Below are positions 21,840-63,935 of a stretch of 64,000 nucleotides of DNA, piece by piece (position 1 is the stretch's first letter; each line of letters begins with the position of its first letter). The position numbers and the translations under genes are program-made. A model generated the notes under the pieces. It worked only from the letters and a program-made list of their open reading frames with translations. It was not told where the DNA came from and did not search any database. This stretch comes from Macrostomum hystrix (Eukaryota > Animalia > Platyhelminthes), in NCBI GenBank assembly GCA_950097015.1, contig CATNEN010000007.1, positions 6,324,001 through 6,388,000 on the forward strand, read 5' to 3'.

Positions 21840-24800
21840 ATGAACGAAGTAGCCGACAACCGGAAGGTGGTTGTGGACCCCAACCCGCTGTCTGACATTG
21901 TCCGTCGAGCCGAAAAGCTTCGCAATGAGGCGGCTGACGCCGGCGGAGTTCTCTACCCGTGCGGCCTCTGCCACAAAGTGTTCAAGTTCAAATATGAGTA
22001 CGAGCGGCACGCCAAGGTACACAGCGGCGACCGGCCCTGGCAGTGCGGCCAGTGCTTCAAATCGTTCAGCCGCAAGGACAACATGCGGGCCCACATGAAG
22101 ATCCACACCGGTGAACTAGTCAGGCACCAGTGCGACCGGTGCGGCAAGACCTACGGCAGAAAGTACGACTTGCAGGTTAGTGAGATTAACGCACCGCTTC
22201 GGGGATTTTCATAGGAAAAGGGAAAGGCATTTTCACATTAGTTGCTCGAATCAGGATTTCATGTTGGGATCAGGATTTCATGTTCGGATCAGGATTTCGT
22301 GCTGGGATCAGGATTTCATGTTGGGATCAGGATTTCATGTTGGGATCAGGATTTCATGTTGGGATCAGGATTTCATGTTGGGATCAGGATTTCATGTTGG
22401 GATCAGGATTTCATGTTGGGATCAGGATTTCATGTTGGGATCAGGATTTCATGTTGGGATCAGGATTTCATTTAGGGATCAGGATTTCATGTTGGGATCA
22501 GGATTTCATTTAGGGATCAGGATTTCATGTTGGGATCAGGATTTCATTTAGGGATCAGGATTTAATGTTGGGATCAGGATTTCATGTTGGGATCAGGATT
22601 TCATGTTAGGATCAGGATTTAATGTTGGGATCAGGATTTCATGTTGGGATCAGGATTTCATGTTGGGATCAGGATTTCATGAATGTTGGGATCAGGGTTT
22701 CATGTTGGGATCAGGATTTCATTTAGGGATCAGGATTTCATGTTGGGATCAGGGTTTCATGTTGGGATCAGGATTTCATGTTGGGATCAGGGTTTCATGT
22801 TGGGATCAGGATTTCATTTAGGGATCGGGATTTCATGTTGGGATCAGGATTTCATGTTGGGATCAGGATTTCATGTTGGGATCAGGATTTCATGTTGGGA
22901 TCAGGATTTCATGTTGGGATCAGGGTTTCATGTTGGGATCAGGATTTCATGTTGGGATCAGGGTTTCATGTTGGGATCAGGATTTCATTTAGGGATCGGG
23001 ATTTCATGTTGGGATCAGGATTTCATGTTGGGATCAGGATTTCATGTTGGGATCAGGATTTCATGTTCGGATCAGGATTTCGTGCTGGGATCAGGATTTC
23101 ATGTTGGGATCGGGATTTCATGTTGGGATCAGGATTTCATGTTGGGATCAGGATTTCATGTTGGGATCAGGATTTCATGTTCGGATCAGGATTTCGTGCT
23201 GGGATCAGGATTTCATGTTGGGATCAGGATTTCATGTTGGGATCAGGATTTCATTTAGGGATCAGGATTTCATGTTGGGATCAGGATTTCATGAATGTTG
23301 GGATCAGGATTTCATGTTGGGATCAGGATTTCATGTTGGGATCAGGATTTCATGTTGGGATCAGGATTTCATGAATGTTGGGATCAGGGTTTCATGTTGG
23401 GATCAGGATTTCATTTAGGGATCAGGATTTCATGTTGGGATCAGGGTTTCATGTTGGGATCAGGATTTCATGTTGGGATCAGGGTTTCATGTTGGGATCA
23501 GGATTTCATGTTGGGATCAGGATTTCATGTTGGGATCAGGATTTCATTTAGGGATCAGGATTTCATGTTGGGATCAGGGTTTCATGTTGGGATCAGGATT
23601 TCATTTAGGGATCGGGATTTCATGTTGGGATCAGGATTTCATGTTGGGATCAGGATTTCATGTTGGAATCAGGATTTCATGTTGGGATCAGGATTTCGTG
23701 CTGGGATCAGGATTTCATGTTGGGATCAGATCCAGATTTTATGATGGACAACTTAGGATATTTAGGCTAATAGATATGTATATTTAAGAGTTGGTTTTAA
23801 CTTTCGTGGAAATGTGAAATAGTTTTTCACTATGGGTAAAAATGTTTAAGAATTTCGGATCCAAAGTTTGTAAGGTTATTAAAATATTATATGAAGGATG
23901 AAGGCTTGGCTGCATCTTCAATCTACATAACTATGCTGTGAGCTTTTGTAAAGTAACGTTTAGGGTCCTTCTATGTAGATGTTTCTCGATGTATGACGCA
24001 AGCTTTGGCCGCAAGGCGTGAGTCAATGACGTCACGTAAGGGTTGTTTATACTCAGTCTGTAGGCCTAAATTAGCTACACTGGCATTGTTTAAGCTGTCG
24101 TTGCTTTTGGTGCTAATTCCTTTTTCGCATAATCTTCAAAGTAGTGATGCGATGTTAAATGATGATTAGAGCTAAATGAAGCAACAGCTGTGAGGGATAG
24201 CTGCTGTACATTGTTACCACTGTCTCTTCTCTCCCGTATCTCATCTCTTCACTGTCTCGTCTCTCCCGTGTCTCACCTCTCCACTGTCTCATCTCTCCCC
24301 TGTCTCATCTCTCCCGTGTCTCATCTCTTCACTGTCTCATCTCTCCCGTGTCTCATCTCTCCACTGTCTCATCTCTCCCGTGTCTCATCTCTCCCGTGTC
24401 TCGTCTCTCCACTGTCTTATCAATCCCCTATCTCGTCTCTCCGCTGTCTTGTCTCTCTCGTGTCTCATCTCACAGTCTTATCTCTCTCTTTTCTCGTCTC
24501 TCCCGTGTCTCATATCTTCACTGTCTCACCTGTCCACTGCCACATCTCTCCACCGTCTCATCTCTAAACGTTCTCATCTCTCCTGTCAATGCGGCTTGCT
24601 GCCGTATCTTGTGCTCTTTCCTTCTCTCCTCTACTTATACTCGCGAGGTATGTAGGGTGGCTGACCCCCGAGGAAAGGGGAAAGTTTTCTAGAAGGAAAA
24701 CTAATTGTCGATATCCCACAGTATAAAAGCATAATGGCGAATTGTACTTTTATCCTTCACAAATTGTACCTATCGCTACAGGTGCATGAGCGGGTGCACA

Positions 24801-25402
24801 GCGGCGAGCGGCCCTTCCAGTGCGCCTCCTGCGGCAAGTCGTTCATCAGCACCAGCCGGCTGCGGGCGCACCAGCTGATTCACTGCAAGAACATCTACCT
24901 GCCCAGGCACGTGCGCAACAAGGCCCTCTCCGACTTGAGGCTGCTCAACTCGAGTAGCCAGCCGATGTCGCCACTGCTGCCGCCTTCGACGGCAGGCGAA
25001 ATCGAGATCGATCTGGACGATGTTGAAGCCGACGACGATGATGCGGAGCTGCAGCAGCTGGACGAGGCGGAGACGGCGTCGTCCTCGGCGGCATCGGCAG
25101 CAGCGGTGCGGCCATCGCCTAACAGCGACTCGGCGGTTGGCAGCCCGGGAGACTACAGCGGCCAGAGCGAGGAGCAACTGCCCGCTGTCTGCCGCATCGA
25201 CGTGGCCGCCAAGATGCGCCAGCTCGAGGCGACGCTGATGCAGCGCAAGGCGGAGCTGGCCCAGCGCGGCATCAAGGTCGAGGTGGACGCCATGCTGGAT
25301 CTGGACTTCCGCCTGCTCGACAACGAGGTCCAGTTTGACATCGTCCTGCCGGAGCCTTGCAAGGCGGAGCCCTCGGAAGGCTGCTTCGCCTACGCGACCT
25401 GA
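21840..25402 (+). CDS. C2H2 zinc-finger protein (4 fingers, acidic C-terminal region, about 318 aa)
   Basis: Exons 21840-22175 and 24782-25402 join as YDLQ|VHERVH. Fingers CGLC..H..H, CGQC, CDRC, CASC with SGDRPW and SGERPF linkers. Confidence 0.92.
22250..23729. repeat. 19-bp intronic minisatellite (AGGATTTCATGTTGGGATC), about 77 copies
   Basis: Read directly; source of the spurious [19 protein letters not shown] ORFs. Confidence 0.98.
24220..24590. repeat. Degenerate CT-rich ~16-bp repeat (TGTCTCATCTCTCCMS)
   Basis: Read directly. Confidence 0.85.
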
Positions 25403-27562: not shown

Positions 27563-30500
27563 TCAAGCATCTTCTCTTAGCTCGCTCTTCACCGAAGCTT
27601 CAGGCGACGCCTCCGCGGCGGCGACACTGTACGGCTCCGACAGCACCGGCGGGCCGGATGGAACAGCAGCCGTTCCTTCGGCGCCCTCCTCCTCCTTCTT
27701 CACCAGCACCTGGATCTCCATCATCACCAGGCCGCTATAATCATCGGAATCGTCAGCCTCCACCTCCGGCTGCTCCTCATCATTGCCGCCACCGCCTCCG
27801 CCATCCTCCTCTCCTCCGCCGTTATCGTAGCCCTCTTCGTCGTCAACATCCTCATCCTCCTCAGTCAGGTCCGGCGCAGATCTAGATGGCCATAGCGATG
27901 CTGTCGGATCGACTTGCGAAGTCTGATAGACGGCGCAGACGCCGCCGCCGCTGTAGGCTGCATCTCCCGGGGCCAGCCGCACCGTGCGCAGACCCGGCCG
28001 CAACAGGCCCGGAGTCTCGCCCAGCAGCCAGGCCAGCGCGGCCGACGTCTCGGAGGGCGAGGCCGCCGAGGCCAGTCGTCGCAGGCTGTCGTCAAGCTTC
28101 TGGCCGATGCGCTGTCGAGGTTGTCGCCGATTTTTAGCGCAGCTCGACCGCCGGTGGAACAGGCTCTCGCAGCCGGCCGCCTGAACGAGGCGCAGCTGAG
28201 CCCGCTGCTCAGTCAGCCGCAGCTCCGTCCAATCCCAGCAGCTCACGCTGGCAACGACCTCAGTGCCACCAGCCGCAAGCTGGACGCGTCGGCGATTTCG
28301 AGCGAGGAAAATCGGCGGCAGCGCAGTTTCAACAACGTCGTCAGGGTCCGGTCGCTGCAGCTGCTGCAGGTAGCGGCACCAATGCTGGGCGGCGGTTGCC
28401 GTGGCTGCAACTGACGGCGCGGCGGCATCTTCAGCGGCTCCGCGTCCTCTCTGCTGCTGCTGAATGGACGCCGACGAGGCTGACGGTTGCGAGTCAGCGG
28501 CTTGCAGGAGGCGAATGGTCAGAACGCGATCTTGCGGATTAAGGCTCATGTGGTACAGCTGCTGCTGCTGCTGCTGATCCTGGGAGTCGGACGGATCTAA
28601 CCTCGCGCGGCTGCATAAGGTGGAATTTCGAGACGACAATCTTATTAGGTAACAATTGTATCGCTTTGATTTTTTTGCATAGATACAAATAACACTTATC
28701 CCAGCTGGGCCAGATTGACAGCTAGTGCCACATCCCCAGCTATTGCATGGAAATGTCTTGTTCGGGTGATACAACTAGTTTCCGAAGGGGCCGAGATTGC
28801 GAAATCATTGACCTCTCAGTTAAAAGTCTGTGGCTCTAACCACTAGGCCTCAACCTGCCCGCCGAAAATGCGAAACCATTGACCTCTCAGTTAAAAGTCT
28901 GTGGCTCTAACCACTAGGCCTCAGCCTGCCCGCCGAGAATGCGAAATCATTGACCTCTCAGTTAAAAGCCTGTGGCTCTAACCACTAGGCCTCAACCTGC
29001 CCGGTAAGCCGTGCTCGTAAAGAGATTAGTTCTCCGCGCATGAAAAGTAAACTGTCACTGACTCACCGACTGCCGTCCTCAGAACTGGCTGCAACACCAG
29101 CAAATGGCTGCTGCCCGCGTTGGGCCAAGTAGAACTGGCGCAGCAGCCGGCGCGAGGGCTCATCAGTCACGAGGATGTGTAGCTGGCGCACCGCCAGCGA
29201 CAGCAGCCGGTCGAGTGTGAAGATTCGATAGTGACGCGAGCCCAGCATGTCGCGAACGCGATCCTCGAAGGTGGCAGGGTCCAGATTGCCGTTGACCATG
29301 GAGGTGGCCAGATACATGAAAGATGAGAAAATCTTAAAGGATCGGCTGCCCGCAGACGCAGCGGTTGGCGCAAGCTCGGCAGCGGTGGCAAGTGCGCCGG
29401 CTTTGACTTCCGCAATGCGCTCGGCCAGCATGTGAAACAGGCGTAGGAAGGAATACACAGTGATGTTACCTGGAAAAAAACACAATAAAATTATTTGCTT
29501 TTAGTAGGCAGACAAAGGATGAAAACAAGTTTTACAGAACAAACCTAATAGCGGGCGCTTCTCTGTCGGATTGACCGGATCTGATCCCTCGATGACGATG
29601 ACGCCTCTGCTGTCGCCGACGTCCTCATCGCCGGGAAGAATTGGAATCCGGGAGTCGGCGGTGACATCGCAAAGCCATCTGCGTAGCAGGCGTTTCATTG
29701 CGGCGCGCTCCTCCAAGCCGACGCCTGTGAGGCGTCTCGCCTGCAGGGTCAGCAGTTCGATGGCGTCTTTCCTAGCACTGGCCGCGTCAGCTGGCATTGC
29801 TAAGCGAAGCATCTGGCCGGGTTTGGTAGCGATCTCGTTCACTAAAGCCCGCGTGCGCATCTGGCGCAAGTCGGCCAGCTTAAAGGCCTGACCCTGCGGC
29901 GGCGATGGTGGAGGATTCGAGGGCGATAGTTAATTATCTTTCACAAACATATTTTAGAACCATAGCAGCAACTATCCGACTCTTACCTGGTGATCCAAGC
30001 TCCTGGCATAGTTTTTATCAACCTGCTCGCGCCACACATTGTTAAACGCTGCGTGAGCTTCACGCCATTCAGCAGCCTTGGCTTTCAATCGCCGAAGAAT
30101 AAGCGGCACAGCCACCGCCGGGTTCTCTTGCATGCACTGGATCGCCGCCTGGGCCTTGTCACCATAGACCCTGTGTAAGACGGGATGGTAAAAATGTTTC
30201 ATTTTCAGGCCTATTTCACGCAAGAGATCGCAGGAAAAAGACAGTTTAATCAAACTAATTCCTAAGACAAATATTAATAAAAAGGTTAAAGAAAAAATAA
30301 AAGAAAAAATTGCTTGCTTCCAGATTTGGATCGAGTACTGTAGGATACAAATGCAGAAAGTACAGCATTTGATAACTAGGATTAGGACGAGAACGGATAA
30401 TCTGGGACTTTAATGCTCGGCTGGACAGCGGCAGTGGCAGAAATAGAGCCAAAGAGAATGCGAGGGGCTTGGCGAATAACGACAGTGTCTCTGACTGCAT

Positions 30501-33500
30501 GTCGCCGAATGGAAAATTGGGCAGAATGGGCTAAACGTTGGCGGGCGGAAAATCCCCGGCGATCAATATGCTTCTGTTGGTTTCCAAGACCTAGAGGCTA
30601 TCATTAAATTGCGACTTATCCCTTTCTAGTCATCCCCATTCCTTCTTCATCTCTGAGCTGTTCTGGTCAATGCAGCGTGTCAGCGAAATTGGTGGGACTC
30701 GCAAGCAGCTCTGCAGAATAAATTGAATGTGGCACAGTAGCAGGAAAGCGAGCAGCATAGATCGGGTGAGGATAAAGAAAGCAGTGGAATGCCTCCGAAA
30801 CAGTCCAGCGTACTGAGTAAAAACCAATACAGATTAAGAATGCGCCAACCACGGATACGCCAAAGCAGCGCTAGCACGAAATGTACTGCTACATTCGGAA
30901 TGCTTTCGACAGCAAAATGAGAGACAAACATCTCGGCATTTTAAAGCACCCAAGGATTTACAAAACGAACAGATGGTATAAGGATAGCCGAAATAGCTAA
31001 GGATTGTTATTCATGATGGTCACAAACTGTTCAGTAGTTTTTGCATGAGCTCAACAAAGGAGATAAGTGGCAGCAACAGTTTAGCCAATAGCGGAGAAGA
31101 CCAGTAAATGTCTTATTCTATATAAAAGCTACATAGCATTTAAACTGACTGAGATTTTACACCGAAAGAACAGGCAATGGAAAATGACCGCTACTCGCCG
31201 TTCCGACGATTCACACCAGAGTCTGTGGAGCGCATTCTATATAGACAGAAGGATGGGACATTTCTAGGCCAAGCTTTAAGCGTACACGCTTCACGGTTTG
31301 GAGTGGCACAGGTAAACTCAAAATCAGCAGCTCCGCTTGTTGGAAGGCATCGAGCAGCACAATTGCAAGCCACTGCGTCAGCAGAGAAAGCAGAAGCTAC
31401 AGGGAATGATAAAGCTGCATGCACAGACACGGACGAGAAGCGGCCGAATCCAAAGCTCGCGGCTGGCATGAAACTGCCACCAGATTTAAGCGACCGATTT
31501 CCAGTCAAGAAATTAAGCGGCGTCATTTTGGAGGATATAGATGAGTACTATGCTGACAAGCTCACATGTGTTGTTATCGCGCGGGACAAAACAATATTTA
31601 GATTTTCAGCCACAAAAGCGCTCATGGTTATGTCACCGTTCAATCCAATTAGACGCTGTGCTATACACATTTTAACACACCCAGCCTTTTCTTTGCTAGT
31701 GCTGCTTGCTATAATCTGCAACTGTGTCTTTATGGCAATGAACAGCAATTCAGAGGCTGTCGAGTATACCTTCACTACGATATATACAGCCGAAGCAACT
31801 ATCAAGGCCTTGTCCAGAGGATTGATTCTATCAAAATTTACATACTTGCGCGACGCATGGAACTGGCTAGACTTCATAGTCATCGGTTTGGCCTACATTA
31901 TGTTTTTTAGTCAGGCTTTAGGAAATCTTAGTGCATTGCGTTCACTTCGCGTTTTGCGAGCTCTAAAGACAGTTACTACAGTGCCAGGCTTGAAGACCAT
32001 AGTTGGTGCCTTGATGGAAGCTGTAAAAAGGTTAAGGGATGTCGGAATCTTAACAATATTTGTGTTGAGCATATTCGCACTCGTCGGACTGCAAGTATAC
32101 AAGGGCACACTTTTGCAAAAGTGTGTAACGAAATTTAATTTGACAGAGTACCTCAACATAGAGCAACTAGCAAATTATTCCGACTTGAGTACAAGCGAGC
32201 AAAAAAATCTGGAGCAGAAATTGAAAAAAATCCACGGAAACAACTACAGCAACTGGTACAGAAACCCGAACGTAAGGGTATGTTCTTTATCTGACCAAGT
32301 CGGACAACAGTGTCCTGATGGCTACGAGTGCTTCCGCACCGATGAATTTAATCCTGACTATGGGTATACCAACTTTGACAACTTTGGCTGGTCGATGCTG
32401 TGTGCTTTCCGGCTAATGACACAAGACTGTTGGGAAAGCTTGTACCAACTTATCATTCGGACCAACGGAAAGCCGCACGTGTTTTACTTCGCATTCGTAA
32501 TCATGCTTGGCTCCTTCTTTCTTATGAATGTCATCCTAGCCATAGTGGCCATGGCCTACGATGAAGTAAGAAGACAGGATAAACTGGATGAGGAGGAAGA
32601 GGCTGCACGAAAGCAAGAAGAGGAAAGACAAGCACAGCAGTCAAACACAGAAGGCCAGGGCTCAGACAGTTATTACTCGGGTGAAATGAGCTGTTTAAGC
32701 TTACGTGACATTTACAAGGCTGCCGGTATACCTCTTGATAGATTAAAGAGAAGCGTAGAGCAGCTCAGCATGCGCTCTGACAAAATTGAAGGTGGACTAA
32801 TGCGCGAAAAGGTTGTCGTCGATGGACCCATGCTGAATTTGCAAAATCAACTACGCAAGAGTCTGAGCTTGCCTAGCTCACCGTGTATCAGGCACAAAGA
32901 CAGGTTTCATCTAAAGCCAACAGACTGTACGCGATTTAACATTCTGGAGGCAGTCAGGTTCCCATATGCTGATGATTCGTCTGCTCAGACACCTGCATCG
33001 GAGCACAATCAAGAGGAAAAAAATCAAAATAGAGGAATAAAAAACCAGGTACAAATCTGCACATTAGGTGGCGTTGATATCGCGACAGATGGATTTCGAA
33101 ATAGAAGAAGCGGCAACTTAAAGAACAATATCTTCATATGCAGCAAAGATGGACAGGATAGACCAACCATCAACCTTGTTTCAAATGAAGAGTACAAAAA
33201 GTCTGCAGCACTCGACCATTCACAGCTACTCAGTAGGAGACAAAGTAATACTTATCTACGAGAAAGGGAAACTCGAGCGCAGACCATCGACATACAAGAC
33301 ATAGTCAAACTAAGAATCCTAGTAGAAAATGCTGCAGAAACAGGTGGCAATGGACTAGATTGCATAGACAAAGAAGCCAAGAGAAAGGAAAATAAATCAG
33401 AATATCTCAAGCGACGCTTTCTGGAGAAATTCTGTCATAGTTGGGAATGCTGCCATTGTTGGAAAGCCTTAGAAAAATATGTAGCTTTTGTTATTTTGGA

Positions 33501-36500
33501 TCCGTTCGCCGAGCTATACATTACGCTCTGTATTCTGGTCAATACGGCTTTTATGGCTCTTGACATGCCAACAAACAGCAAAAGGTTTAGCGAATTTCTC
33601 AGCAATGCAAATCTTTTCTTTACAGCCACATTCGCCGTTGAAGCCATTTGCAAGCTAGTTGGAATGAAGCCACGAGTGTACTTTAAGGATGGTTGGAATA
33701 TATTTGACTTCACAATAGTTATTCTAAGCCTGGCAGAGCTTCCACTGCAAAACGTTCAAGGTCTGTCGATTCTGCGAGCATTCCGGCTTCTTCGAGTATT
33801 TAAACTTGCGAAGTCATGGCAGACGATGAATTTGCTCTTCGCTATCATTGCGAGGACTATGGGAGCATTAGGAAATTTAGTATTTGTGTTAGGTATAATA
33901 ATTTTCATATTTGCTGTTGTTGGAATGCAACTGTTTGGTGAAAGTTATTCAATGTACAAAAACATAACTTTGTATCCACACTACAAAGGCGACTATCCAA
34001 GATGGAACTTCAAGGACTTCACACACAGCTTTATGATAGTGTTTCGTGTATTGTGTGGTGAATGGATCGAGAGTATGTGGCACTGTATGAACGTCAATGG
34101 ATTCATATGCGTACCGTTTTTCTTGCTAACCAACATATTGGCCAGTCTGGTTGTTCTCAGCTTGTTCTTGGCGCTGCTTCTAAGCAGCTTTGGAGCCGAG
34201 AGCCTTCAGAGACGTGAAGTGGAGGAAGAGGTCAACAAATTGCAAGAGGCTATTGATAGAATCAAAAGGTTTATAGTGTGGTTGCGACTGCAGACAATAA
34301 GAATTTTCTGGTACATTGTCCATAACATTCGGGACAGATTGTGCAACCAGGAGTTCACAGATGAAGACTTATTTGAAAGTGACAGTCAGGATGCTGATGA
34401 AAATGAAGAACCTGGGGACAGAAAAAGGCCGACAATAAGTCCAGATGGAAGGTTTGCACTGAAGCGTCACGGCGCTTTTTTAATGGAAAACTTGAGCATC
34501 GCGGCAAGCAATATGGTATTCAAGGACATAAACGAGCTTCACGCCAATCGGGATGCTTGCACCGAGGCTCACAACAAAATATATCCAACATGTCAGTTCA
34601 GCCTTGCACTCGAGGACCAATTCCCACCGATATTTGAAGAGCCAGAAATAAACGAAGTCGATATTGTTTATTGGGACGCTCCCGAGGATTGCTTCCCAAA
34701 GAGGCTGACAAACTATTGCCCAAATGTGATGCAGCTATGCGACACAACAAAGTGTGGCAAAATTTGGTGGACGTTTCGATGTCAAATTTATAAACTCGTC
34801 GAACACAAGTACTTCGAGACGTTCATAATATTGATGATTGCACTAAGTAGTCTTACATTAACTCTGGAGGATGTTAATCTGCATAACAAGCCAAAACTGA
34901 AGCTTATCCTTGAGCACATGGACAAATGTTTTACCATAATATTTTCACTCGAAATGGCGCTGAAGTGGGTCGCCTTTGGTCTAAAGAAGTATTTTAAGGA
35001 CGCATGGTGCTGGCTAGATTTCATTATAGTAAATGTGGCGCTTTGCAGCCTTGTGCTGAACCTACTGGGAGGAGCATCCGGTCAAAACATGGGCGCCTTC
35101 AAAGCGATGAGAACGCTAAGAGCTTTAAGGCCGCTGAGAGCGGTTAGCCGTTGGGAAGGGATGAAGGTCGTTGTGAACGCGCTGATCCAGGCGATACCGT
35201 CGATTTTCAATGTATCGCTTGTGTGCCTAGTATTCTGGCTAATTTTTAGCATTATGGGGGTGCAACTGTTTGGCGGACAATTCTACAAATGTGTCGAAAA
35301 TGAAACGCAAGAGCGCCTGCTCCCGGAGGTTGTCCCAAATCAAACAATTTGCGAGGAGATGGCAAACAAATTCGGGAATGTGACATGGCAGAATTCGCGA
35401 ATCAATTTTGACAACGTGTTAAACGGCTACCTGGCTCTATTTCAAATCGCTACATACAAAGGTTGGCTTGGAATTATTGCTGACGCAGTTGACATCACAG
35501 GTAAGTTCGCATAAGTAATAATCGAACAATAAGAATATTCTTATAACAAACATTACTTTAGACTCGTCTGTATCTTTTCGTTTCAGGCGTCGGTATCCAG
35601 CCACAAAGGGACGCGAACACAACGATGTACCTGTTCTTTGTGCTATTTATTATATTTGGTTCATTCTTTACACTGAAGCTTTTCATCGGCGTCATTATTG
35701 ACAATTTTAACATGCAAAAGAAGCGAGCCGGTGGTTCGATGGAGATTTTCTTGACGGAAGATCAGAAGAAATACTACAAGGCAATGAAGAAAATGAGTAG
35801 TTCAGCCCCTCAGAAGCCGGTACCAAAGCCAAAGCTGAAAGTTTCTCAATTCTTCTTCAAGATAACTAGCAACCAGAAATTTGACGTTGTAATAATGATA
35901 TTCATCATGCTCAATACAATTGTGATGTGCATAGAGCATCACGACCAATCGGAAACTTTTAACTTCGTAGTGGAGCAGATCAATCGGTTTTTTATTGTGA
36001 TATTCACAGCGGAGTGTGTCATGAAACTTATGGCGCAGCGGTGGTACTACTTTAAATTTCCATGGAATATGTTCGACTTCGTTATCGTGGTGCTGAGCAT
36101 TCTCACCTGGGCTGTGGAAGATATAATTCAACTGCTGCGCATACCACCAACTATAATCCGAGTGGTGCGCGTGTTCCGAGTAGGTCGCGTTCTTCGTCTG
36201 GTCAAGTCAGCAAGAGGAATCCGCACCCTGCTGTTCTCACTGTTCGTGTCACTGCCAGCCCTGTTTAACATAGGCCTGCTTCTGGTGATGATAATGTTCA
36301 TCTACAGCATTGTCGGCATCTCCTTCTTCAGTCACGTGCGGCACAGCAGCGGCATAGATGAGATGTTCAACTTTGAGACCTTTTCCAGCGGCATGGTCGT
36401 GTTGTTCCAGCTCAGCACCTCCGCCGGCTGGGACAGCATCCTGGACGGCCTCACAAATGAGAAGCCGCCGCACTGCGATCCAGACAAGAAGCCGCACAGC

Positions 36501-38937
36501 GATTGCGGCAGCTACGCACTGGCCGTCCTTTTCCTGGTCTCCTACCTGGTGATTAGCTTCTTGGTCATCATCAATATGTACATTGCGGTCATACTGGAGA
36601 ACTTCAGCCAGGCAACTGAGGATGTTCAGCAAGGACTAACGCAAGAGGACTTCGACCTGTTTTACGAAAAATGGGAGTCCTACGATCCCAAGGCGAAGGG
36701 CTTCATTCCGGTGAGCCAGGTGTACGACTTCCTGGACGAGCTGGAGCCGCCGCTGCAGCTGCCGCAGCCGAATCGGATCAAGCTGGCCACCCTCAGCGTG
36801 CCGATATGCAAGGGCGAGACCATCTTCTGCGTAGACCTGCTGGACGCTCTGACTAGAAACTTTCTGGGAACAGCCGCCGACGAAGAGAGCCTGGCGGCTT
36901 TGAAGCCGAAGGCGGGCGGCAAGATCAAAGACGAGCGCATTGTGATTAGCAACACGTACGAGCGACAGAAGCAGCGGTACGCGGCCGGAATCATTGCACG
37001 ATGCTTGCAAAATCGTGTGGCGATGCGGAAGAGCACAGCGCTGCGGGACAGCGCCTTGAAGAACTGAATAGTTTTGTCACAGCCACAGCGTGCAAACTAT
37101 AATAAACCCATCGCAATAATAACTTACTAACCGATTTTGATATTTCTACACAAAAGCGCTTTTTTAAATTGAATACTAAACAGACAATAGAATAATATCG
37201 ATGCTAAATTATGTTTATCGCGTAGACATACTAGAAAAGCTTCTCAATCGAAAGTATCTACATTGCATTATAAACTGTTGATTTTTGTTATAAACACTAA
37301 TTAAAAATAGTGAGCAGTTAGCAGTCTAGAGCATCGTAGCAGATTTCACAAAACATGTGTTTTTACTTTTTTTACAAATCTATCTGCTCCTCAGATACTA
37401 AAGAAAGCAAAAAATAGTCCAAAAACAAATACTGGAAGAAAAAAACGGATCGAAAATACACTATATTGGTAAATAGTTAAGCGCAATGATGAGAAATAAG
37501 AGAACGAAGACAAGAGGGAGTGGAGCGGAGCGCAGGAGCGGAGCAATGCACTCACCTGTAGATAGCCTGGCGCTGCAGCACAGCGGAGCCGCCGCATAAG
37601 TCATCGCCCAGTCGGTAGCGCGCCAATTCGTCGGCGCTAGTTAGCCGCTGCAGACGTCGGTAAGTTGACTCCAGAGCCCGCACAGCCGCCTTGTTCACCT
37701 CTAGCACCATGTCCAATTCGTAGCGCTCGTCCTCCACGCGGCAGCAGGCCTCTTCGTGTGCGTTGCGCCGACCGCCGCCCTGCGAGTCCTCAGACAGCCA
37801 GCTGGGAAAGCTGACCAGAGTATCGTTGAGAGCGTCGCGACAGTCTGGTGGCAGATGGTCCCGGCCGCTGCAGCGGGGCGGAGGAACGCCGCGCGGCGCC
37901 GCCCTGTAGGAGCCGCCGTCGATTTGAAGCTGCAGCGAGTCGATTTCCGGCGGTTGAGACTGCTGCTGCCGGCGCTGCTGGCGGCTAATGTCCTCAGCAC
38001 TGGTCAGGTCTGCTCTCAGCCAAGCCAATAAATCGGGAAACGGGCGCAAGAAGGCGCCGACCCTAGCCAGGAAACTCTGTCGGTCAGCGCAGCCGGTGGC
38101 GTACAAGTTGAGGCAACGCAGGAAGTTTGCGAACACCTCCGGCTCGCCAATGGCCGCCTCGAAACGTTCGAGGAAGCGCGCCGCCTCGGCATCAAATCTG
38201 GCAGCGTCGGCTGCAGCAGCGGCAGCGTCGGTTGTGGGCAAGGGGGCGCGAACTGGCTGGGACCTGGAGCGCCGCCTGCGCCGCTTCTGGTGATAGAGTG
38301 GAGGCGGTGGTCGCGAGTCAAACAGCGACAATGGCCCGTTAGACGAGTCGGTGGCGGCTAGTGCGCGTCGCTTAGGCATAGTCGACAGTGAGCTCGGCGA
38401 CGATGGTCTCGGCCTCTTCTTGTGTGCGCTTGAAGGCTGGACAGCGGAGGGTGTCACGTGGGTGCCGGCGACAGGTATTGGCGTGGCCGCCTGCGGCTGC
38501 TGAAGAGCTGCAGCAGGCGTGGCCATGTCTAGGAGAAGACAAAGTAACATTTGTTCGTAATAAGGTATAAACTTTGAAATACTGGCATTACTTATAGTAG
38601 GAATGGTACAACATTCACGATAACGACAGAAAATTCCAGACATCAGTTTTCAGTAACAAACGCAATGATTCACTAACCGCCAGACTGTGATTTCTGCTGG
38701 TGCTGCTGCTGTTGCCGGTTAGGCAAAAACATGGCAAACTCGTCCAGTAGGTCCGACTGTCCGCCAAATAGGCGCCCAAGCTCCGTCATGACCTGCGTGT
38801 CGCAGTGCACCCGCCCAGCCCGCTGCTCCTTCTGGTAGCGATGCAGGATTTCCAGGAACTGTTTGTAGACAACCGAGCGACCGGCAAAGCGCGACTTAAT
38901 TTTGTTCACGTAGGCGATGGCATGGTTGAACTCTTCA

Positions 38938-38969
<32 letters not shown>

Positions 38970-40194
38970 CCGTTGCTGTTGTTGCTGCTGCTGCTCCTGA
39001 TGTTTTTGGGACTGCTTTGATGGCTGTGTTTGAGCCGTAAGCGGCGTGGTGGCAACACCAGAGGGTAAAAAGGCAAGAAAGCCAGTCAGCAGGTCCGGGT
39101 GCGAGCGAAACAGCTGGCGCACCCTGGCCAGAGCGGTCTGCGGAATTCAATGGGATCATGGTGAGATGAGGGTGAGACTGAAGGTCTGGGAGGAATTCAA
39201 TGGGATCAGGGTGAGATGAGGGTGAGACTGAAGGTCTGGGAGGAATTCAATGGGATCAGGGTGAGATGAGGGTGAGACTGAAGGTCTGGGAGGAATTCAA
39301 TGGGATCAGGGTGAGATGAGGGTGAGACTGAAGGTCTGGGAGGAATTCAATGGGATCAGGGTGAGATGAGGGTGAGACTGAAGGTCTGGGAGGAATTCAA
39401 TGGGATCAGGATGACTTGAGGGTGAGAGCGAAGGTCTGGGAGGAATCAAATGGGATCAGGGTGAGACAGGGACGAGTGCAAAGGACAGAGAAGGCCACGA
39501 AGAGTTGAAAGTATTAAAATAGGGAGATTCAGTGGGGGTGCCGAGGGCGCTCGATAATATGGCTAGGAATTTTTTACCTGTGGATCAATGACGCCAGCCT
39601 TGAAGTCTCTCAGCATATCAACAAAGGCACTATAGATGGCCGGACTATCTGCAGCGAACCGGCGCTTCACTGTCGCGATATAGTTCTGCGCGGCGTCCAT
39701 TCGGCCGGGCGAGGCGGAGTTCGAACCCGATACCTCCTGAACGGATTAGAGAATTTTCGGCGGAGGCAATACAATGTGTTCTTGATTCATGCAAAACTCC
39801 ATGCGGATAAATACTTGTTTGATGATGAGGCACAAAACTACGCAGCTATATGTATATTTCCTGCCTTTAGGTTTGATAAGGCTAGGTGAATTCGGCTCAC
39901 TTGCAACAGACTACTACCAGTAGTAGCAAGAGAGTATTAGCTTACCGTGGAAGCCTGCAACGAGATCTGCTGCGGCTGTGACTGCGGCTGCAACAGCAGC
40001 AGCTCCGGCTGGCCAGCGACACTGGTAGGATAGGAGGCTAAACTTGGCGCAACTCCGGCGCTAACCCGACCAGCGCTAGAGGCAGCCAATGCTGCCCTAT
40101 TGGCGGCTACTGCTGCGGCTGACATGGCACTGCCAGACGATGTTACAACAATGGAGTGATGGCTGAGGCCGACCGCCTGGTGGTTTGACTGCAT
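27563..40194 (-). CDS. SIN3: Paired amphipathic helix corepressor Sin3 (about 1274 aa)
   Basis: Exons 40194-39946, 39736-39578, 39137-38678, 38528-37556, 30170-29987, 29893-29545, 29469-29067, 28610-27563 join in frame (3825 nt). PAH1 AQNYIATVKRRF..RVRQLFRSHPDLLTGFLAFLP; PAH2 EFNHAIAYVNKIKSRF; PAH3 NFLRCLNLY; HID LNDTLVSFPSW.SEDS..EDERYELD; R|VYGDKA..AVPLILRRLK..SLDHQ; Sin3_C FTLDRL. Confidence 0.95.
28790..29002 (-). repeat. Three tandem 71-bp units resembling a degenerate tRNA-Lys(UUU) or SINE head
   Basis: Reverse complement GGGCAGG..GGCCTAGTGGTTAGAGCCACAGACTTTTAACTGAGAGGTCAATGGTTTCG: A-box-like and CTTTTAA anticodon-loop-like segments, degenerate T arm. Confidence 0.7.
31119..31128 (+). 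promoter_or_regulatory. Candidate TATA box of the nested Nav gene
   Basis: TATATAAAAG about 50 bp upstream of ATG 31177. Confidence 0.35.
31177..37067 (+). CDS. Voltage-gated sodium channel alpha subunit, Nav1 (DEKA) type, 1934 aa, nested antisense in a Sin3 intron
   Basis: Exons 31177-35500 and 35587-37067 with one GT-AG intron (35501-35586). Four S1-S6 repeats with Arg/Lys-rich S4s; P-loops TQDCWE, CGEWIE, TYKGW, TSAGWD; DIII-IV linker IFLTEDQKKYY; EF-hand-like C-terminus; AATAAA at 37101. Confidence 0.98.
39136..39470. repeat. 50-bp intronic minisatellite containing copies of the Sin3 3' splice-site sequence
   Basis: Unit AAGGTCTGGGAGGAATTCAATGGGATCAGGGTGAGATGAGGGTGAGACTG; on the sense strand TTGAATTCCTCCCAG|ACC mirrors the real acceptor TTGAATTCCGCAG|ACC. 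Confidence 0.93.
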
Positions 40195-46529: not shown

Positions 46530-48662
46530 ATGCAGCGCATGCCAGAGGCCACTCAGTGGCAGTGCGAAAATGTATTCGCTACACTAATGCGTCGGCCTAT
46601 TGGCCCGCCACCATCGTCGCTGCATGGACCTTCTGTCAGCCTGGCTATGCGGCCTTTCCCTACAGAATTCCTGTCCCACATGGAGTTGGCCTGGTCCGAC
46701 ACTATCGAGGTAGCCGGCGACGCCAGCCCACTTGTGCCGCCAATGCAGGCCGACTATTGCAAGCGACCCGATAGGCCTAGCCTCCTGGCTGTTGGCGACG
46801 AAGAAGGCGGCGTCCTGCTGATGAACACGGACCTGCCAGCCGGCTCCAGCCTGCAGGCCGCCTGGCGGGCGCATCGGAATGCCATCTTCGATTTGCAGTG
46901 GCTGGCAGACAGCGGCGAACAGCTGCTCACCGCCTCGGGGGATAAGACGGTGCGGCCCGGTGGCTTAAATGCTTACAATTAGTTGTATATTAAATAGGCA
47001 CATAATTGATAGGCATTTAGCCTTTTGAGTTTGGCCTATTTCCTCTGTGTCTTTGCTGGCAAGATTTGGCCATTCAAACAGGGGGAAAGTTTGAGTCTAG
47101 TACAATCTTCTCAAACCCCTATTTAGGTGCGGCTGCACTCCTGCTTAGATCGGCGCGAGCTCCGCGCATTCCAGGGCCACACCAGCTCGGTGAAGAGCCT
47201 CAGCTGCCGCCCAGGCGAGCCGGCTAGCCGGGGCCAGTTCTGCAGCAGCTCACGCGACGGCACAGTCCGCCTCTGGGACTCCCGCACCCCAGCTGGCTGC
47301 GTCAGCGTCATTCCTGATGCCCACGCCGCCTGCACTGTCGCAGTTAACAACGCCGGCCCACGACGCTCAGCTCCGACGCCAGCTGCCCGGCGTCGTCGAA
47401 GTACAATCGCGTGCGGGAGCGGCGGCGGTGGCGCCAATAGCGTGACTTGCGCAGTGTTCATCGACTCGCACAGCTTGGCCACTTGCGGCGCGGCCGATGG
47501 TTTCATCAAACTGTGGGACCTGCGCTCGCTGCCTTCAGCAGCATCGTCGGCTACAGCTGCACCTGCAGCGCAGCGTCGCCGTGTGTCATTGGCAACGTCG
47601 AAGTCTGCGACGCCTTTCCAGACGCTGGCGTACCCGGGTCCGGGCAAGCCGCATGGCTATTCTCACCTGGCCTTCGACCGGGGCCGCCTGTTCGCCAGCT
47701 GCCTGGACTCCGCCTTGTACGAGTTCCAGCCATTGGCACGGAGGCCTGGGCCAAGCGCCGTCTACCGCGGCCACCATCGCGTTGATGCATTCTACGCTCG
47801 TAGCAGCGTCAGTCCCGATGGTCGCTTCGTGGCTGCTGGCAGCAACGACTGCCGCGTTGTCCTGTACGCCACTGACTGGCAGCAGGTCGGCCAGCCGCCG
47901 GCGCTTCTGTCCGGCTTCGATGCTGAAGTGCCGGTGGCGGTCTGGTGCCCGGCCGGCTGCGACCCGCTGCGGCTGGCCACGCTGTCCGACGACTGCACCG
48001 TGCGACTGTGGCGCCTTAGCCGGCGACGTCACTGGGAAATGGAAGGCCAGGCGGCTGACACGGAGCGTATTCGACTGCGCGCTCTGGCCACACTGGCTGA
48101 CGACGCCGACGGCTGCTGGAGCTGTCGATGTCCCGCCGAGGCTTTGCCAGCTACGTCGGCGAATGTTCCGACGGTTGCGCCGACGCCCACGTCCTCGAGC
48201 CAGCGTCAGTTAAATATACGGAACTTTTTGGCGGCGTCATTGTCAGGAAGCTCAGAGACGGCCTCGGTGGCCTTCTCGCGACATCGCAGTCCACTGGGGC
48301 GCCAGCTCACCCTGCCGCAGACGCCGCCTCCGCAGCCGACGCCACAGCCACCTCCTCCGCTGTCAATGCTGCGCGACTCGACCAACACGCCGTCTAGGCG
48401 CCTGTCAAAACGACCGGCAGTCAAGTCGCCGTCTCCATCACCGACGGCCTCTCCGCTCCGGCCTCTGCAGTTAAACAGTCAGCAACAGCCGCAGCAGCAA
48501 CAGTTTAAGAAGTCCGCGAAGCGACCTCGCGTGTCCCGGCAGTCGAAGCCTATCGGTGGAGGCACTCCAGACCGTCCCCGCCTTGGCGGCGATCCTGCAG
48601 CCTCACCGTCAGCCCAGCTCATCACAAACTTCTTTAAACCGCTACTACCACCAGCTCTGTGA
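46530..48662 (+). CDS. DTL: Denticleless/Cdt2 WD40 substrate receptor of CRL4 (about 651 aa)
   Basis: Exons 46530-46949 and 47127-48662. LAVGDEEG, AHRNAIFDLQW, LLTASGDKT, GHTSSVKS, SRDGTVRLWDSR, GAADGFIKLWDLR, FYARSSVSPDG, TLSDD; disordered SP/TP-rich tail ending in PIP-like LITNFF. Confidence 0.92.
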
Positions 48663-62807: not shown

Positions 62808-63935
62808 ATGGCGGAAAAGTACTATCAGAACTCGCTTTACTCGTCGACTAAACCGAAGGACAACAATGGCAGTGGCCAGCCGCAGTACGAGGACGCAGCA
62901 TCCTTCCACCAGCAGCAGCCGGGCCGCACCCGCAGTGTCATCTCGGCCCGCACAGGCGCCAGCGCGTACAGCCAGGTGACGAAAAAGTCCAGCGAATTCT
63001 TTCGCACGGACGTCGGCAGCTTAGAACGCAAAGTGCCGCTGGGCCAGCGCATCTCCAAGTTCATCTGGAACCCGGATGATCGCACCTTCCTTGAGCGCGA
63101 CGGCCTCGCCTGGGCCAGGCTCATTGTTTTCTACATCGCATTCTACGCCTTCATCGCCCTGATCTGGATGGCCTGCTTCGCGCTGTTCGACTTCGCGGTG
63201 CTGAATGAGGACCGGCCGGTGCTGTCCGGAGAGCAGAACGTGCTGCGCCTGAACCCCAGTCTGAGCTACATTCCGCAGCCCGACTACTACACCAGCCTTA
63301 TTCGCTACCGCAACAGCCGCTTCTCCAGCGCCAGAAAATACATTGACGACCTCGTGGCGTTCACGCAGTGGTACGAGGACTACGCACTGCAGGGCAAAAG
63401 TTTTGTCACCGAAACCACCAAAGACTGCGCCGCCGATGGCAAGAATACAGACCCGGTCAACACCGTCTGCCGCTTCAACCTGGACGTTGGCCGGCGCTGC
63501 AACGCCTACGTCAACTTCGGCTTCGTCGACGGCGATCCGTGCATCGCGCTGAAGCTCAACCGCGTCTACGGCTGGGTGCCGGACCCAGTGGACGAAGGAA
63601 CCTCCACGAACGCGTCAAGCACTGGCGTGCTGGTAAAGTGCCAGGGCAGAACGCCGACGGACCGGGACTTCATCAAGCAGATCTGCTATCACTACACCAG
63701 CAACGGCTGGGACGGCTCTGACGGCTACTGCAAGGAGGGCTACGGCGTCTTCGAGCAGTATTACTTCCCCTACCTGAGGCAGCTGCGCTACATGTCTCCG
63801 CTGGTGTTTGTCGAGTTTAGGGGCATCACCCGCAATGTGGTCACCATGATCGAGTGCTGGGCCGAGGCCAAGAACATCAAACTCGACCGCACCTACCGCA
63901 TCGGAATGGTCCAGTTTGAGATTCTCATCGACTGA
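62808..63935 (+). CDS. ATP1B: Na+/K+-ATPase beta subunit (nervana/ATP1B family), intronless, 375 aa
   Basis: FIWNP..FLER.G.AW.RLIVFY..FY TM segment, CRF, C....FGF.DG.PC..LKLNRVYGW.P, YYFPY, Y.SPLV.V, IECWA.AKNI. Confidence 0.95.
   Translation: MAEKYYQNSLYSSTKPKDNNGSGQPQYEDAASFHQQQPGRTRSVISARTGASAYSQVTKKSSEFFRTDVGSLERKVPLGQRISKFIWNPDDRTFLERDGLAWARLIVFYIAFYAFIALIWMACFALFDFAVLNEDRPVLSGEQNVLRLNPSLSYIPQPDYYTSLIRYRNSRFSSARKYIDDLVAFTQWYEDYALQGKSFVTETTKDCAADGKNTDPVNTVCRFNLDVGRRCNAYVNFGFVDGDPCIALKLNRVYGWVPDPVDEGTSTNASSTGVLVKCQGRTPTDRDFIKQICYHYTSNGWDGSDGYCKEGYGVFEQYYFPYLRQLRYMSPLVFVEFRGITRNVVTMIECWAEAKNIKLDRTYRIGMVQFEILID

What the first reader, a model, noticed from the sequence alone, without database searches (positions are those of the whole stretch)
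30171..37555. Complete, almost intronless Nav1 channel gene nested antisense in a Sin3 intron
Seen: the Sin3 HID region is split (..QAIYR|VYGDK.., phase 2) by a 7,385-bp intron holding an intact 1934-codon four-domain Na+ channel ORF on the opposite strand. It has a single 86-bp intron, a candidate TATA box and an AATAAA. Known: Nav genes typically have more than 20 introns and span tens of kb; Sin3 is the corepressor REST uses to silence Nav genes in vertebrates. Inference: a retroposed or intron-purged Nav paralog whose expression may be coupled to, or interfered with by, host Sin3 transcription.
Basis: partly seen in the sequence, partly recalled or inferred. Interest (0 to 1): 0.85.

Follow-up and report, generated by a model that had tools for sequence, protein, structure and literature searches.

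The report
Intron-poor flatworm sodium channel inside Sin3
A complete nerve-type sodium channel gene with one tiny intron sits backwards inside an intron of the Sin3 co-repressor gene of the flatworm Macrostomum hystrix; this is an old, inherited arrangement shared by the species' whole Nav1 family, not a recent retrocopy.

Summary
A 1934-codon four-domain DEKA (Nav1-type) channel gene lies on the + strand: exon 31177-35500, an 86-bp GT-AG phase-1 intron, exon 35587-37067. It sits inside a 7,385-bp intron (30171-37555) that splits the Sin3 HDAC-interaction domain on the - strand.

The assembly's size, contig count and N50 match Macrostomum hystrix exactly. The genome holds three DEKA Nav1 paralogues, and all three are intron-poor. 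They share the same intron at the same codon and phase (86 bp here, 78 bp on C2, 1,743 bp on C39). Each has its own orthologue in M. lignano. Their synonymous sites are saturated.

The intron-rich "Nav" genes are Nav2 (DEEA), so no intron-rich Nav1 parent exists.

The C2 paralogue lies antisense in the same intron (same position and phase) of a second Sin3 gene. The nested pair was therefore duplicated as a unit long ago.

Nearly all of the roughly 25 ancestral introns were lost before the triplication, probably through reverse transcription. I found no evidence of Sin3-Nav regulatory coupling. No RNA run was listed, so expression is untested.

The parts
31085..31128 (+). Candidate core promoter of the Nav gene: CCAAT (31085-31089) and TATATAAAAG (31119-31128), 49-92 nt upstream of the ATG
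   Evidence: Read directly. Not conserved in the paralogues. No RNA evidence.
31177..35500 (+). Nav1 exon 1: N-terminus, domains I-III up to the DIII pore loop (1441 codons plus 1 base)
   Evidence: (Ion_trans x3, Na_trans_assoc).
35501..35586 (+). The only intron in the coding region: 86 bp, gtaagt...tttcag, phase 1, inside the Gly of DAVDITG|VGIQP
   Evidence: Same position and phase in the paralogues on C2 (78 bp) and C39 (1,743 bp). No hairpin (z = 0.07).
35587..37067 (+). Nav1 exon 2: DIII S6, III-IV linker (IFL motif), domain IV, C-terminal tail, stop TGA at 37065-37067
   Evidence: (Ion_trans, GPHH).
37101..37106 (+). Candidate polyadenylation signal AATAAA, 34 nt after the stop
   Evidence: Not verified by RNA.
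30171..37555 (-). Sin3 host intron (7,385 bp, gtgagt...cacag, phase 2). The Nav unit fills about 81% of it.
   Evidence: The same intron in the C2 Sin3 paralogue hosts the C2 Nav.
37556..38643 (-). Sin3 exon upstream of the host intron: PAH3 and the N-terminal part of the HDAC-interaction domain, ending ...LQRQAIY-R. Its 5' boundary was not determined.
   Evidence: Pfam Sin3_corepress and PAH. Aligns to Sin3B 262-513.
29987..30170 (-). Sin3 exon downstream of the host intron: C-terminal part of the HID (VYGDK...SLDHQ), followed by a 93-bp intron (29894-29986)
   Evidence: Aligns to Sin3B 515-576.
38678..39122 (-). Sin3 PAH-repeat exon (ORF bounds; donor at 38677)
   Evidence: Pfam PAH, 1.1e-16. 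Sequence read.
27563..29485 (-). Sin3 C-terminal exons (Sin3a_C domain; ORF bounds 29063-29485 and 27563-28774)
   Evidence: Pfam Sin3a_C, 1.3e-19.

Best explanation
This is one of three ancient paralogues of the ordinary flatworm Nav1 (DEKA) voltage-gated sodium-channel gene in Macrostomum hystrix. It is intact and under purifying selection, and it most likely encodes a working neuronal or muscle Na+ channel driven by its own promoter (CCAAT and TATA boxes, own AATAAA). Its near-intronless structure is a family trait. The common ancestor of the three Macrostomum Nav1 genes had already lost almost all of the roughly 25 ancestral Nav1 introns. The most plausible cause is a reverse-transcriptase-mediated process: either recombination with a cDNA, or an old retroposition that replaced the parent gene. 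That ancestor carried a single phase-1 intron in the domain-III pore loop, which all three paralogues still have. The gene was already lying antisense inside the HID intron of Sin3 when the Sin3+Nav block (with two neighbouring zinc-finger genes) was duplicated, because both resulting loci (C7 = this window, and C2) keep the same nested layout. The duplication predates the M. hystrix / M. lignano split, and synonymous sites are saturated. Shown: anatomy, family membership, shared intron, duplicated nesting, orthology, absence of an intron-rich Nav1. Inferred: the mechanism of intron loss, promoter use, expression, and channel function.
For: Species: assembly size of 220,453,370 bp, 42 contigs, N50 13,505,968 and longest contig 35,345,953 equal Table 1 for M. 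hystrix in PMC10468722. Family: Pfam domains; best PDB matches are Nav1.x channels, E about 1e-300; DEKA filter. Tree: IQ-TREE gives 100/100 support for (C39+Mlig P0004/5, ((window+Mlig P0001), (C2+Mlig P0002/3))), inside flatworm Nav1 with Bdelloura. The window protein is 90% identical to P0001 over 1563 columns. Shared intron: same codon and phase in all three genes (ACAG|GT...) with lengths 86, 78 and 1,743 bp. The C2 intron is in frame and stop-free, which is why C2 looks like a 1985-aa ORF. No parent: a domain-IV search with all 87 candidates scored finds only these three genes above 45% identity. The multi-exon genes on C1, C38 and C7:5.78 Mb carry TLDFWE/CGEWIE/FEGW/TSAGW, i.e. DEEA, so they are Nav2. 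Nesting duplicated: the C2 locus is collinear with window 21.9-39 kb, and its Sin3 intron is at the same codon and phase (KAIQ-R|IYGER), 8.6 kb long, holding the C2 Nav antisense. Selection and age: dN 0.19-0.27 with pS about 0.80-0.82, which is saturated. Gene-specific loss: the Nav2 and Cav-like genes of the same genome are split into many short exons. The genome mean is 6 exons per gene and 692-bp introns.
Against: There is no transcript evidence. No RNA run was listed, and no M. hystrix-derived protein appeared in the protein database. Promoter, poly(A) site, splicing and any 5' UTR exon or spliced leader are therefore unverified. The third paralogue (C39) is not next to any Sin3 sequence, so the nesting may be younger than the first duplication, or Sin3 was lost there. 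The origin of the single intron is unresolved. It lies 2 nt from (phase 1 versus phase 0) an intron position implied for birds and insects by read-through N-termini of partial gene models. It is absent from the Nav2 genes and from an uninterrupted 785-aa ORF of an unidentified sister-lineage contig (P0121). Exons are long genome-wide (mean 788 bp), so part of the intron loss may reflect a general trend in this genome.
Confidence: 0.8

Rival explanations
1. Ancient whole-gene retroposition. A fully processed Nav1 mRNA was reverse-transcribed and landed antisense in the Sin3 HID intron. The intron-rich parent was later lost. The domain-III intron was gained afterwards at an AG|GT proto-splice site, before the triplication. 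This is a specific version of the reverse-transcriptase step left open in the best explanation.
For: The location is typical for a retrocopy: whole unit inside a host intron, opposite strand, own TATA promoter. The exon junction is ACAG|GT in all three genes. The intron is 2 nt and one phase away from the position implied for birds and insects, and is absent in Nav2 and in the sister-lineage ORF P0121. C39 shows that these genes can gain introns, since it has an extra one in the C-terminal tail.
Against: There is no poly(A) remnant or target-site duplication, though these would have decayed. C39, the earliest-branching paralogue, is not in Sin3. The near-coincidence with an ancestral intron site also fits retention. 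Whether P0121 is genomic DNA or cDNA is unknown.
Confidence: 0.35
2. One reading: a recent retroposed paralogue of a conventional intron-rich Nav1 gene still present in the genome.
For: Only the low intron number itself.
Against: No intron-rich DEKA gene exists in the assembly. All three Nav1 genes share the structure and the intron. Each has a one-to-one orthologue in M. lignano. Synonymous sites are saturated.
Confidence: 0.03
3. The nesting is functional. Transcription of Sin3 across the antisense Nav unit, or the reverse, gives mutually exclusive or coupled expression, and this is why both duplicated pairs kept the layout.
For: The nested layout survives in two loci whose synonymous sites are saturated. 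Both Sin3 copies keep PAH, HID and Sin3a_C segments.
Against: A gene inside an intron is carried along by any duplication of its host, and it cannot leave without a rearrangement, so conservation is the null expectation. No conserved non-coding sequence was found in the host intron. C39 works without Sin3. No expression data exist. From my own knowledge, REST, the proposed link, is regarded as a vertebrate factor.
Confidence: 0.07
4. Artefact or dead gene: a mis-assembly that placed a Nav gene inside Sin3, or an unexpressed pseudogene.
For: No RNA evidence was obtainable.
Against: The same nesting occurs on two different contigs. The 1934-codon frame is open. The protein is 90% identical to its M. 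lignano orthologue, and all pore and S4 motifs are kept. dN is far below the saturated dS.
Confidence: 0.03

Closest known systems
Bilaterian Nav1 alpha subunits (insect para, mollusc Nav1, the flatworm Bdelloura candida channel O02037, vertebrate Nav1.x)
   Same: Four 6-TM domains, DEKA selectivity filter, short III-IV linker with a hydrophobic triplet, and 41-49% identity to mollusc, annelid and insect Nav1. It groups with flatworm Nav1 in the tree.
   Different: It has one intron instead of about 25 (PMC6259924). The inactivation triplet is IFL rather than MFM/IFM. The domain-I toxin-site position is Cys rather than an aromatic residue (QDCWE). It is one of three lineage-specific paralogues.
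Macrostomum lignano predicted sodium channel A0A1I8JLI5 (P0001)
   Same: Direct orthologue: 90% identity over 1563 aligned columns, sister with 100/100 support, and the same sequence across the intron site.
   Different: It is a protein prediction only; its gene structure and neighbours could not be fetched. It has Tyr (QDYWE) where the window gene has Cys.
Nested (intronic, opposite-strand) genes of animals, and intron-poor retrogene-derived genes
   Same: The whole transcription unit lies inside a host intron on the other strand, has its own promoter signals, and has very few introns.
   Different: There is no surviving parent gene. The intron-poor state is shared by a whole ancient gene family. 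The host-guest pair was duplicated as a unit and both pairs were retained.
Nav2 (DEEA) channels of the same genome (C1:10.32 Mb, C38:3.55 Mb, C7:5.78 Mb)
   Same: Same 4x6TM architecture, with 42-55% identity in the conserved segments.
   Different: Glu instead of Lys in domain III. At least 13 exons each. Their intron lies before xFEGW, not after DAVDxTG.

Membership tests
Nav1 voltage-gated sodium channel alpha subunit | Four homologous six-transmembrane domains in one polypeptide | tested here: met
   Pfam Ion_trans: three stretches in exon 1 and a fourth in exon 2, plus Na_trans_assoc. Full-length alignment to solved Nav1.x structures.
Nav1 voltage-gated sodium channel alpha subunit | DEKA selectivity filter (Lys in domain III) | tested here: met
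   TQDCWE / CGEWIE / TYKGW / TSAGWD.
Nav1 voltage-gated sodium channel alpha subunit | Hydrophobic fast-inactivation triplet (IFM/MFM) in a short III-IV linker | tested here: inconclusive
   The linker is present with GGSMEIFLTEDQKKYY. The triplet is IFL here, LFM on C2 and MFM on C39. The functional consequence is unknown.
Nav1 voltage-gated sodium channel alpha subunit | Phylogenetic placement inside the Nav1 clade, apart from Nav2 | tested here: met
   IQ-TREE, 100/100 support for the split from Nav2. It lies inside flatworm Nav1.
Nav1 voltage-gated sodium channel alpha subunit | Voltage-gated, Na+-selective current | not testable with these tools
   Needs heterologous expression and electrophysiology.
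Retrogene (processed retrocopy) | Lacks the introns of its source gene | tested here: inconclusive
   It has one coding intron, against about 25 in Nav1 generally. A strict retrocopy would have none, so the remaining intron must be either retained or gained.
Retrogene (processed retrocopy) | An intron-containing parent gene elsewhere in the genome | tested here: not met
   Own-genome searches find only three equally intron-poor Nav1 genes, a very divergent intron-poor DEKA gene on C3, and DEEA Nav2 genes.
Retrogene (processed retrocopy) | Poly(A) remnant and flanking target-site duplication | tested here: not met
   No A-run after the 3' end and no flanking repeat were seen on inspection. Both would have decayed at this age.
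Nested intronic gene | Whole coding unit lies between two exons of a host gene that are contiguous in the host protein | tested here: met
   The flanking exons align to Sin3B residues up to 513 and from 515. Splice signals are GT..AG in phase 2. Splicing was not checked with RNA.
Sin3 co-repressor (host gene) | PAH repeats, HDAC-interaction domain (Sin3_corepress), Sin3a_C | tested here: met
   Pfam hits on successive - strand exons. PDB Sin3A, Sin3B and yeast SIN3 matches.

The most novel reading that the evidence does not exclude
The antisense Nav-in-Sin3 layout is kept by selection as a transcriptional-interference switch: Sin3 transcription in non-excitable or stem cells would silence the embedded channel gene, and Nav transcription would do the reverse in neurons. 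That would explain why two independently evolving Sin3-Nav pairs have kept it since before the Macrostomum radiation.
Probability: 0.06. Interest if true: 0.7.

Novelty: new member of a known kind. Interest (0 to 1): 0.38.

Why it matters
It gives a clean, datable case of almost complete intron loss in a large and normally intron-rich neuronal gene, set beside intron-rich sister genes (Nav2, Cav) in the same genome. It shows a flatworm Nav1 expansion to three paralogues, independent of the vertebrate one, whose copies differ at the toxin-site and inactivation-gate positions. It also shows that a host-guest gene pair can be duplicated and kept as a unit over a very long time. None of this overturns current views of channel or genome evolution. 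Its value is as a well-defined example and as a correction to gene models, because the 78-bp in-frame intron of the C2 paralogue would be read through by ORF-based annotation.

Tried and rejected
- **RNA evidence.** The look-up of sequencing runs listed no run. Nothing can be said about expression, strand, transcript ends or a spliced leader.
- **Closed or exhausted tools.** The WD40 gene and the Na/K-ATPase beta gene of the window have no copy near the C2 locus.
- **Mirtron or structured-RNA reason for keeping the intron.** Rejected: fold z-scores are 0.07 and -0.32, and there are no Rfam hits in 27-40 kb.
- **Conserved non-coding elements** in the host intron between the paralogous loci: none.
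- **A second protein search with exon 2**, looking for M. hystrix transcripts or junction-spanning fragments: none found. The best hit was an unidentified ENA contig protein, P0121, at 72%, and its source could not be identified.
- **Literature.** No paper in the searchable library describes Macrostomum Nav gene structure or a Sin3-Nav nesting.
- **dN/dS.** It could not be quantified because dS is saturated.
- **Spliced model.** The joined (spliced) Nav model was never sent to a search tool. All database searches were done exon by exon, by reference. The joined model was used only inside scripts, for tblastn against loci of the same genome, for alignment and for trees.
Full report
**1. Observation**

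The + strand carries two long open frames, 31177-35514 and 35625-37067. They join through a canonical intron, cacag|gtaagt...tttcag|gcgtc, at 35501-35586. The intron is 86 bp and phase 1. The spliced model has 1934 residues.

Pfam finds four Ion_trans domains, Na_trans_assoc and GPHH. The best solved relatives are Nav1.x channels, with E about 1e-300. The pore motifs are TQDCWE, CGEWIE, TYKGW and TSAGWD, which give the DEKA filter of Nav1 channels.

A CCAAT box (31085), a TATA box (31119) and an AATAAA (37101) flank the coding region.

On the - strand a Sin3 exon (Pfam PAH and Sin3_corepress) ends ...QAIY-R at 37556 with donor gtgagt. The next exon, VYGDK..., starts at 30170 after the acceptor cacag. 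The two exons align to residues up to 513 and from 515 of Sin3B (PDB 8bpa), with the split Arg codon as residue 514. The 7,385-bp intron is therefore real at the protein level. Further Sin3 exons (PAH, Sin3a_C) lie on either side.

**2. Whose genome**

The assembly has 220,453,370 bp in 42 contigs. The window's contig is 13,505,968 bp and the longest contig is 35,345,953 bp. These are exactly the total, contig count, N50 and longest contig given for Macrostomum hystrix in Table 1 of Wiberg et al. 2023 (PMC10468722). The closest database proteins are M. lignano sodium channels, at 66-81% identity. That paper reports a mean of 6 exons per gene, a mean exon of 788 bp and a mean intron of 692 bp. 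Long exons are therefore common in this genome, and a 7.4-kb intron is unusually long.

**3. The rest of the family in the same genome**

Six-frame searches with each exon find two further close relatives:
- C2:2281669-2287599, 74% identical overall.
- C39:7863666-7871399, 67% identical overall.

They also find three multi-exon genes, on C1:10.32 Mb, C38:3.55 Mb and C7:5.78 Mb, with 42-55% identity in conserved segments. These three carry TLDFWE / CGEWIE / FEGW / TSAGW, i.e. DEEA. They are Nav2 channels, not Nav1, and have at least 13 exons each.

In the domain-IV search all 87 candidates were scored, and nothing else exceeded 45% identity. The genome therefore has no intron-rich DEKA Nav1 gene. 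The Cav-like genes are also cut into many short exons, so the intron poverty is specific to Nav1 among the 4x6TM channels. A very divergent DEKA gene on C3 is also intron-poor (see section 11).

**4. The single intron is shared**

All three Nav1 genes are interrupted after the first base of the Gly codon in DAVD(I/T)TG|VG, with exon ends ACAG|GT.
- The intron is 86 bp in the window.
- It is 78 bp on C2 (2286014-2286091).
- It is 1,743 bp on C39 (7867681-7869423).

The C2 intron is in frame and free of stops, which is why C2 looked like a single 1985-aa ORF. The C39 intron holds a Tc1/mariner-type transposase ORF (Pfam DDE_3 and HTH). C39 also has a second, private intron in the C-terminal tail. 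M. lignano protein models read straight across the junction with no insertion. The common ancestor of the three genes thus already had this one-intron structure.

**5. Phylogeny and age**

I ran IQ-TREE (LG+G4, 1647 columns) on the three models, five M. lignano proteins, Bdelloura, molluscs, annelid, nemertean, brachiopod and arthropods, with the three Nav2 genes as outgroup. The tree gives 100/100 support for (C39 + Mlig P0004/5, ((window + Mlig P0001), (C2 + Mlig P0002/3))). That clade is sister to Bdelloura within Nav1.

The triplication therefore predates the M. hystrix / M. lignano split. These genes are the flatworm's canonical Nav1 genes, not copies beside a parent. Between paralogues, pS is 0.80-0.82 (saturated) while dN is 0.19-0.27. 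That indicates great age and strong purifying selection.

**6. The nesting is duplicated too**

tblastx shows the C2 locus to be collinear with window 21.9-39 kb. The shared order is two C2H2 zinc-finger genes, the Sin3 C-terminal exons, the Nav gene, then the Sin3 HID and PAH exons. The C2 Sin3 copy is split at the same codon and phase (KAIQ-R|IYGER) by an intron of about 8.6 kb that holds the C2 Nav gene antisense.

The nested pair was therefore duplicated as a unit, and both pairs were retained. This also rules out mis-assembly. C39 has no Sin3 sequence nearby. Either Sin3 was lost there, or the nesting arose after C39 split off. The WD40 and Na/K-ATPase beta genes further along the window have no copy near the C2 locus.

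**7. How the introns were lost, and where the last one comes from**

Fux et al. 2018 (PMC6259924) report 20 intron positions shared by Nav1 and Nav2 in the conserved domains, plus five Nav1-specific linker introns. The Macrostomum Nav1 ancestor thus lost about 24 of 25. Loss of that many introns from one gene, while its sister genes keep theirs, points to a reverse-transcriptase-mediated event. That could be recombination with a cDNA, or retroposition with later loss of the parent. This step is an inference.

The origin of the surviving intron is open.
- Partial gene models of birds start either at ATFKGW... or, after read-through of ...(L/W/S)Q, at (Y/C)EEQP.... Insect models similarly join or start at VGKQP after a read-through Gln.
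- These imply an old phase-0 intron between the residues that align with Gly1442 and Val1443 of this protein.
- The Macrostomum intron lies 2 nt upstream of that site, in phase 1.
- The M. hystrix Nav2 genes have the neighbouring ancestral intron (FQV|xFEGW) but none at this site.
- An unidentified ENA contig encodes an uninterrupted 785-aa ORF (P0121) that is sister to the Macrostomum clade (95-96% SH-aLRT). It reads straight through the site and then appears to run into an intron at ...ATLQ|V.

Retention with a small shift and fresh gain at an AG|GT proto-splice site are both tenable, and I rate them about equal. The intron hides no hairpin or known RNA.

**8. Function and coupling**

Nothing in the sequence departs from a working channel. 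All S4 arginine ladders, pore loops and the III-IV linker are present. The N-terminus aligns with those of its paralogues.

No RNA run was listed, so expression, strand, transcript ends and splicing remain untested. I found no conserved non-coding sequence in the host intron and no other sign that Sin3 and Nav regulate each other. Conservation of the nesting is what physical linkage alone would produce. The REST-Sin3-Nav link is a vertebrate pathway (my own knowledge) and was not testable here.

**9. Comparison with the known, and novelty**

The gene is a member of Nav1. The defining features that I could test are met, except that the inactivation triplet is IFL. It works like an ordinary nested intronic gene. 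It fails the retrogene test on the parent-gene criterion.

The searchable literature has no description of Macrostomum Nav gene structure or of a Sin3-Nav nesting. The genome itself is published and annotated. I class this as a new member of known kinds: an intron-depleted gene family and a nested gene pair, with a moderately interesting evolutionary history.

**10. Limits**

- No reads could be laid.
- The joined spliced model was used only inside scripts and was never sent to a search tool. All searches were exon by exon, by reference.

**11. Side observations**

- A fourth, very divergent DEKA channel with a 1367-codon exon lies on C3. Its branch is too long to place.
- The window gene has Cys at the domain-I toxin-site position (QDCWE). 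Its M. lignano orthologue and C39 have Tyr, and C2 has Ala. This bears on the separate first-stage note s1-840166.

Noticed in passing
G000:C3:6944849-6949530 (L042:4849-9530, + strand): A fourth, very divergent four-domain channel with a DEKA-like filter (CQDWWD / CGEWIE / VFKGW / TSAGF). It has no IFM/MFM-type triplet (MAMLTD) and is encoded mostly by one 1367-codon exon. It is 30-37% identical to the window gene. Its branch is too long to place in the tree.
   Followed up: partly
window 32.3 kb (domain-I pore, QDCWE); paralogues on C2 and C39: The residue after the filter Asp in domain I is Cys here, Ala in the C2 paralogue, and Tyr in C39 and in the M. lignano orthologue. An aromatic residue at this position is what makes Nav1 channels tetrodotoxin-sensitive (my own knowledge). 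The paralogues may therefore differ in toxin sensitivity.
   Followed up: partly
G000:C39:7867681-7869423 (L029:4681-6423): On C39 the shared Nav1 intron is 1,743 bp long and contains a 310-aa - strand ORF with DDE_3 and Tc3-type HTH transposase domains, i.e. a Tc1/mariner insertion. C39 also has a private second intron in the C-terminal tail (DELDPPLQ|VPAPN).
   Followed up: yes
G000:C1:10322864-10336414, C38:3547998-3578226, C7:5777549-5791215 (all - strand): Three intron-rich Nav2 (DEEA) channel genes with at least 13 exons each. On C38 the last exon lies about 18 kb from the rest.
   Followed up: partly
G000:C2:2286014-2286091 (L026:6014-6091): The 78-bp intron of the C2 Nav1 paralogue is in frame and has no stop codon, so the gene appears as one 1985-aa ORF. 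ORF-based annotation would add 26 spurious residues to the domain-III pore loop.
   Followed up: yes
protein P0121 (ENA contig of 7,471 bp, source unknown): An uninterrupted 785-aa ORF covering the II-III linker to the C-terminal tail of a Nav1 channel. It is 65-67% identical to all three Macrostomum paralogues and is their sister in the tree. It has no intron at the Macrostomum site, and its C-terminal end looks like read-through of a donor (…ATLQ|V).
   Followed up: partly
window 21840-22214 and 24734-25402 (+ strand): Two C2H2 zinc-finger ORFs downstream of Sin3's 3' end are also present, in the same order, beside the C2 Sin3-Nav pair (82-87% amino-acid identity in the finger regions).
   Followed up: partly
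window 62808-63935 (+) and 47127-48662 (+): A single-exon Na+/K+-ATPase beta-subunit gene lies 26 kb from the sodium channel gene, and there is also a single-exon WD40-repeat gene. Neither has a copy near the C2 locus.
   Followed up: partly
window 27.5-39.1 kb: Strong compositional contrast between host and guest. Sin3 exons are 56-62% G+C, the Nav coding sequence is 45% (GC3 52%), and the non-coding remainder of the host intron is 34-43%.
   Followed up: no
window 6000-12000 and 22000-24000: Strong GC skew (-0.31 to -0.51, and +0.40) with overlapping ORFs on both strands, suggesting repetitive or low-complexity arrays. Not examined.
   Followed up: no
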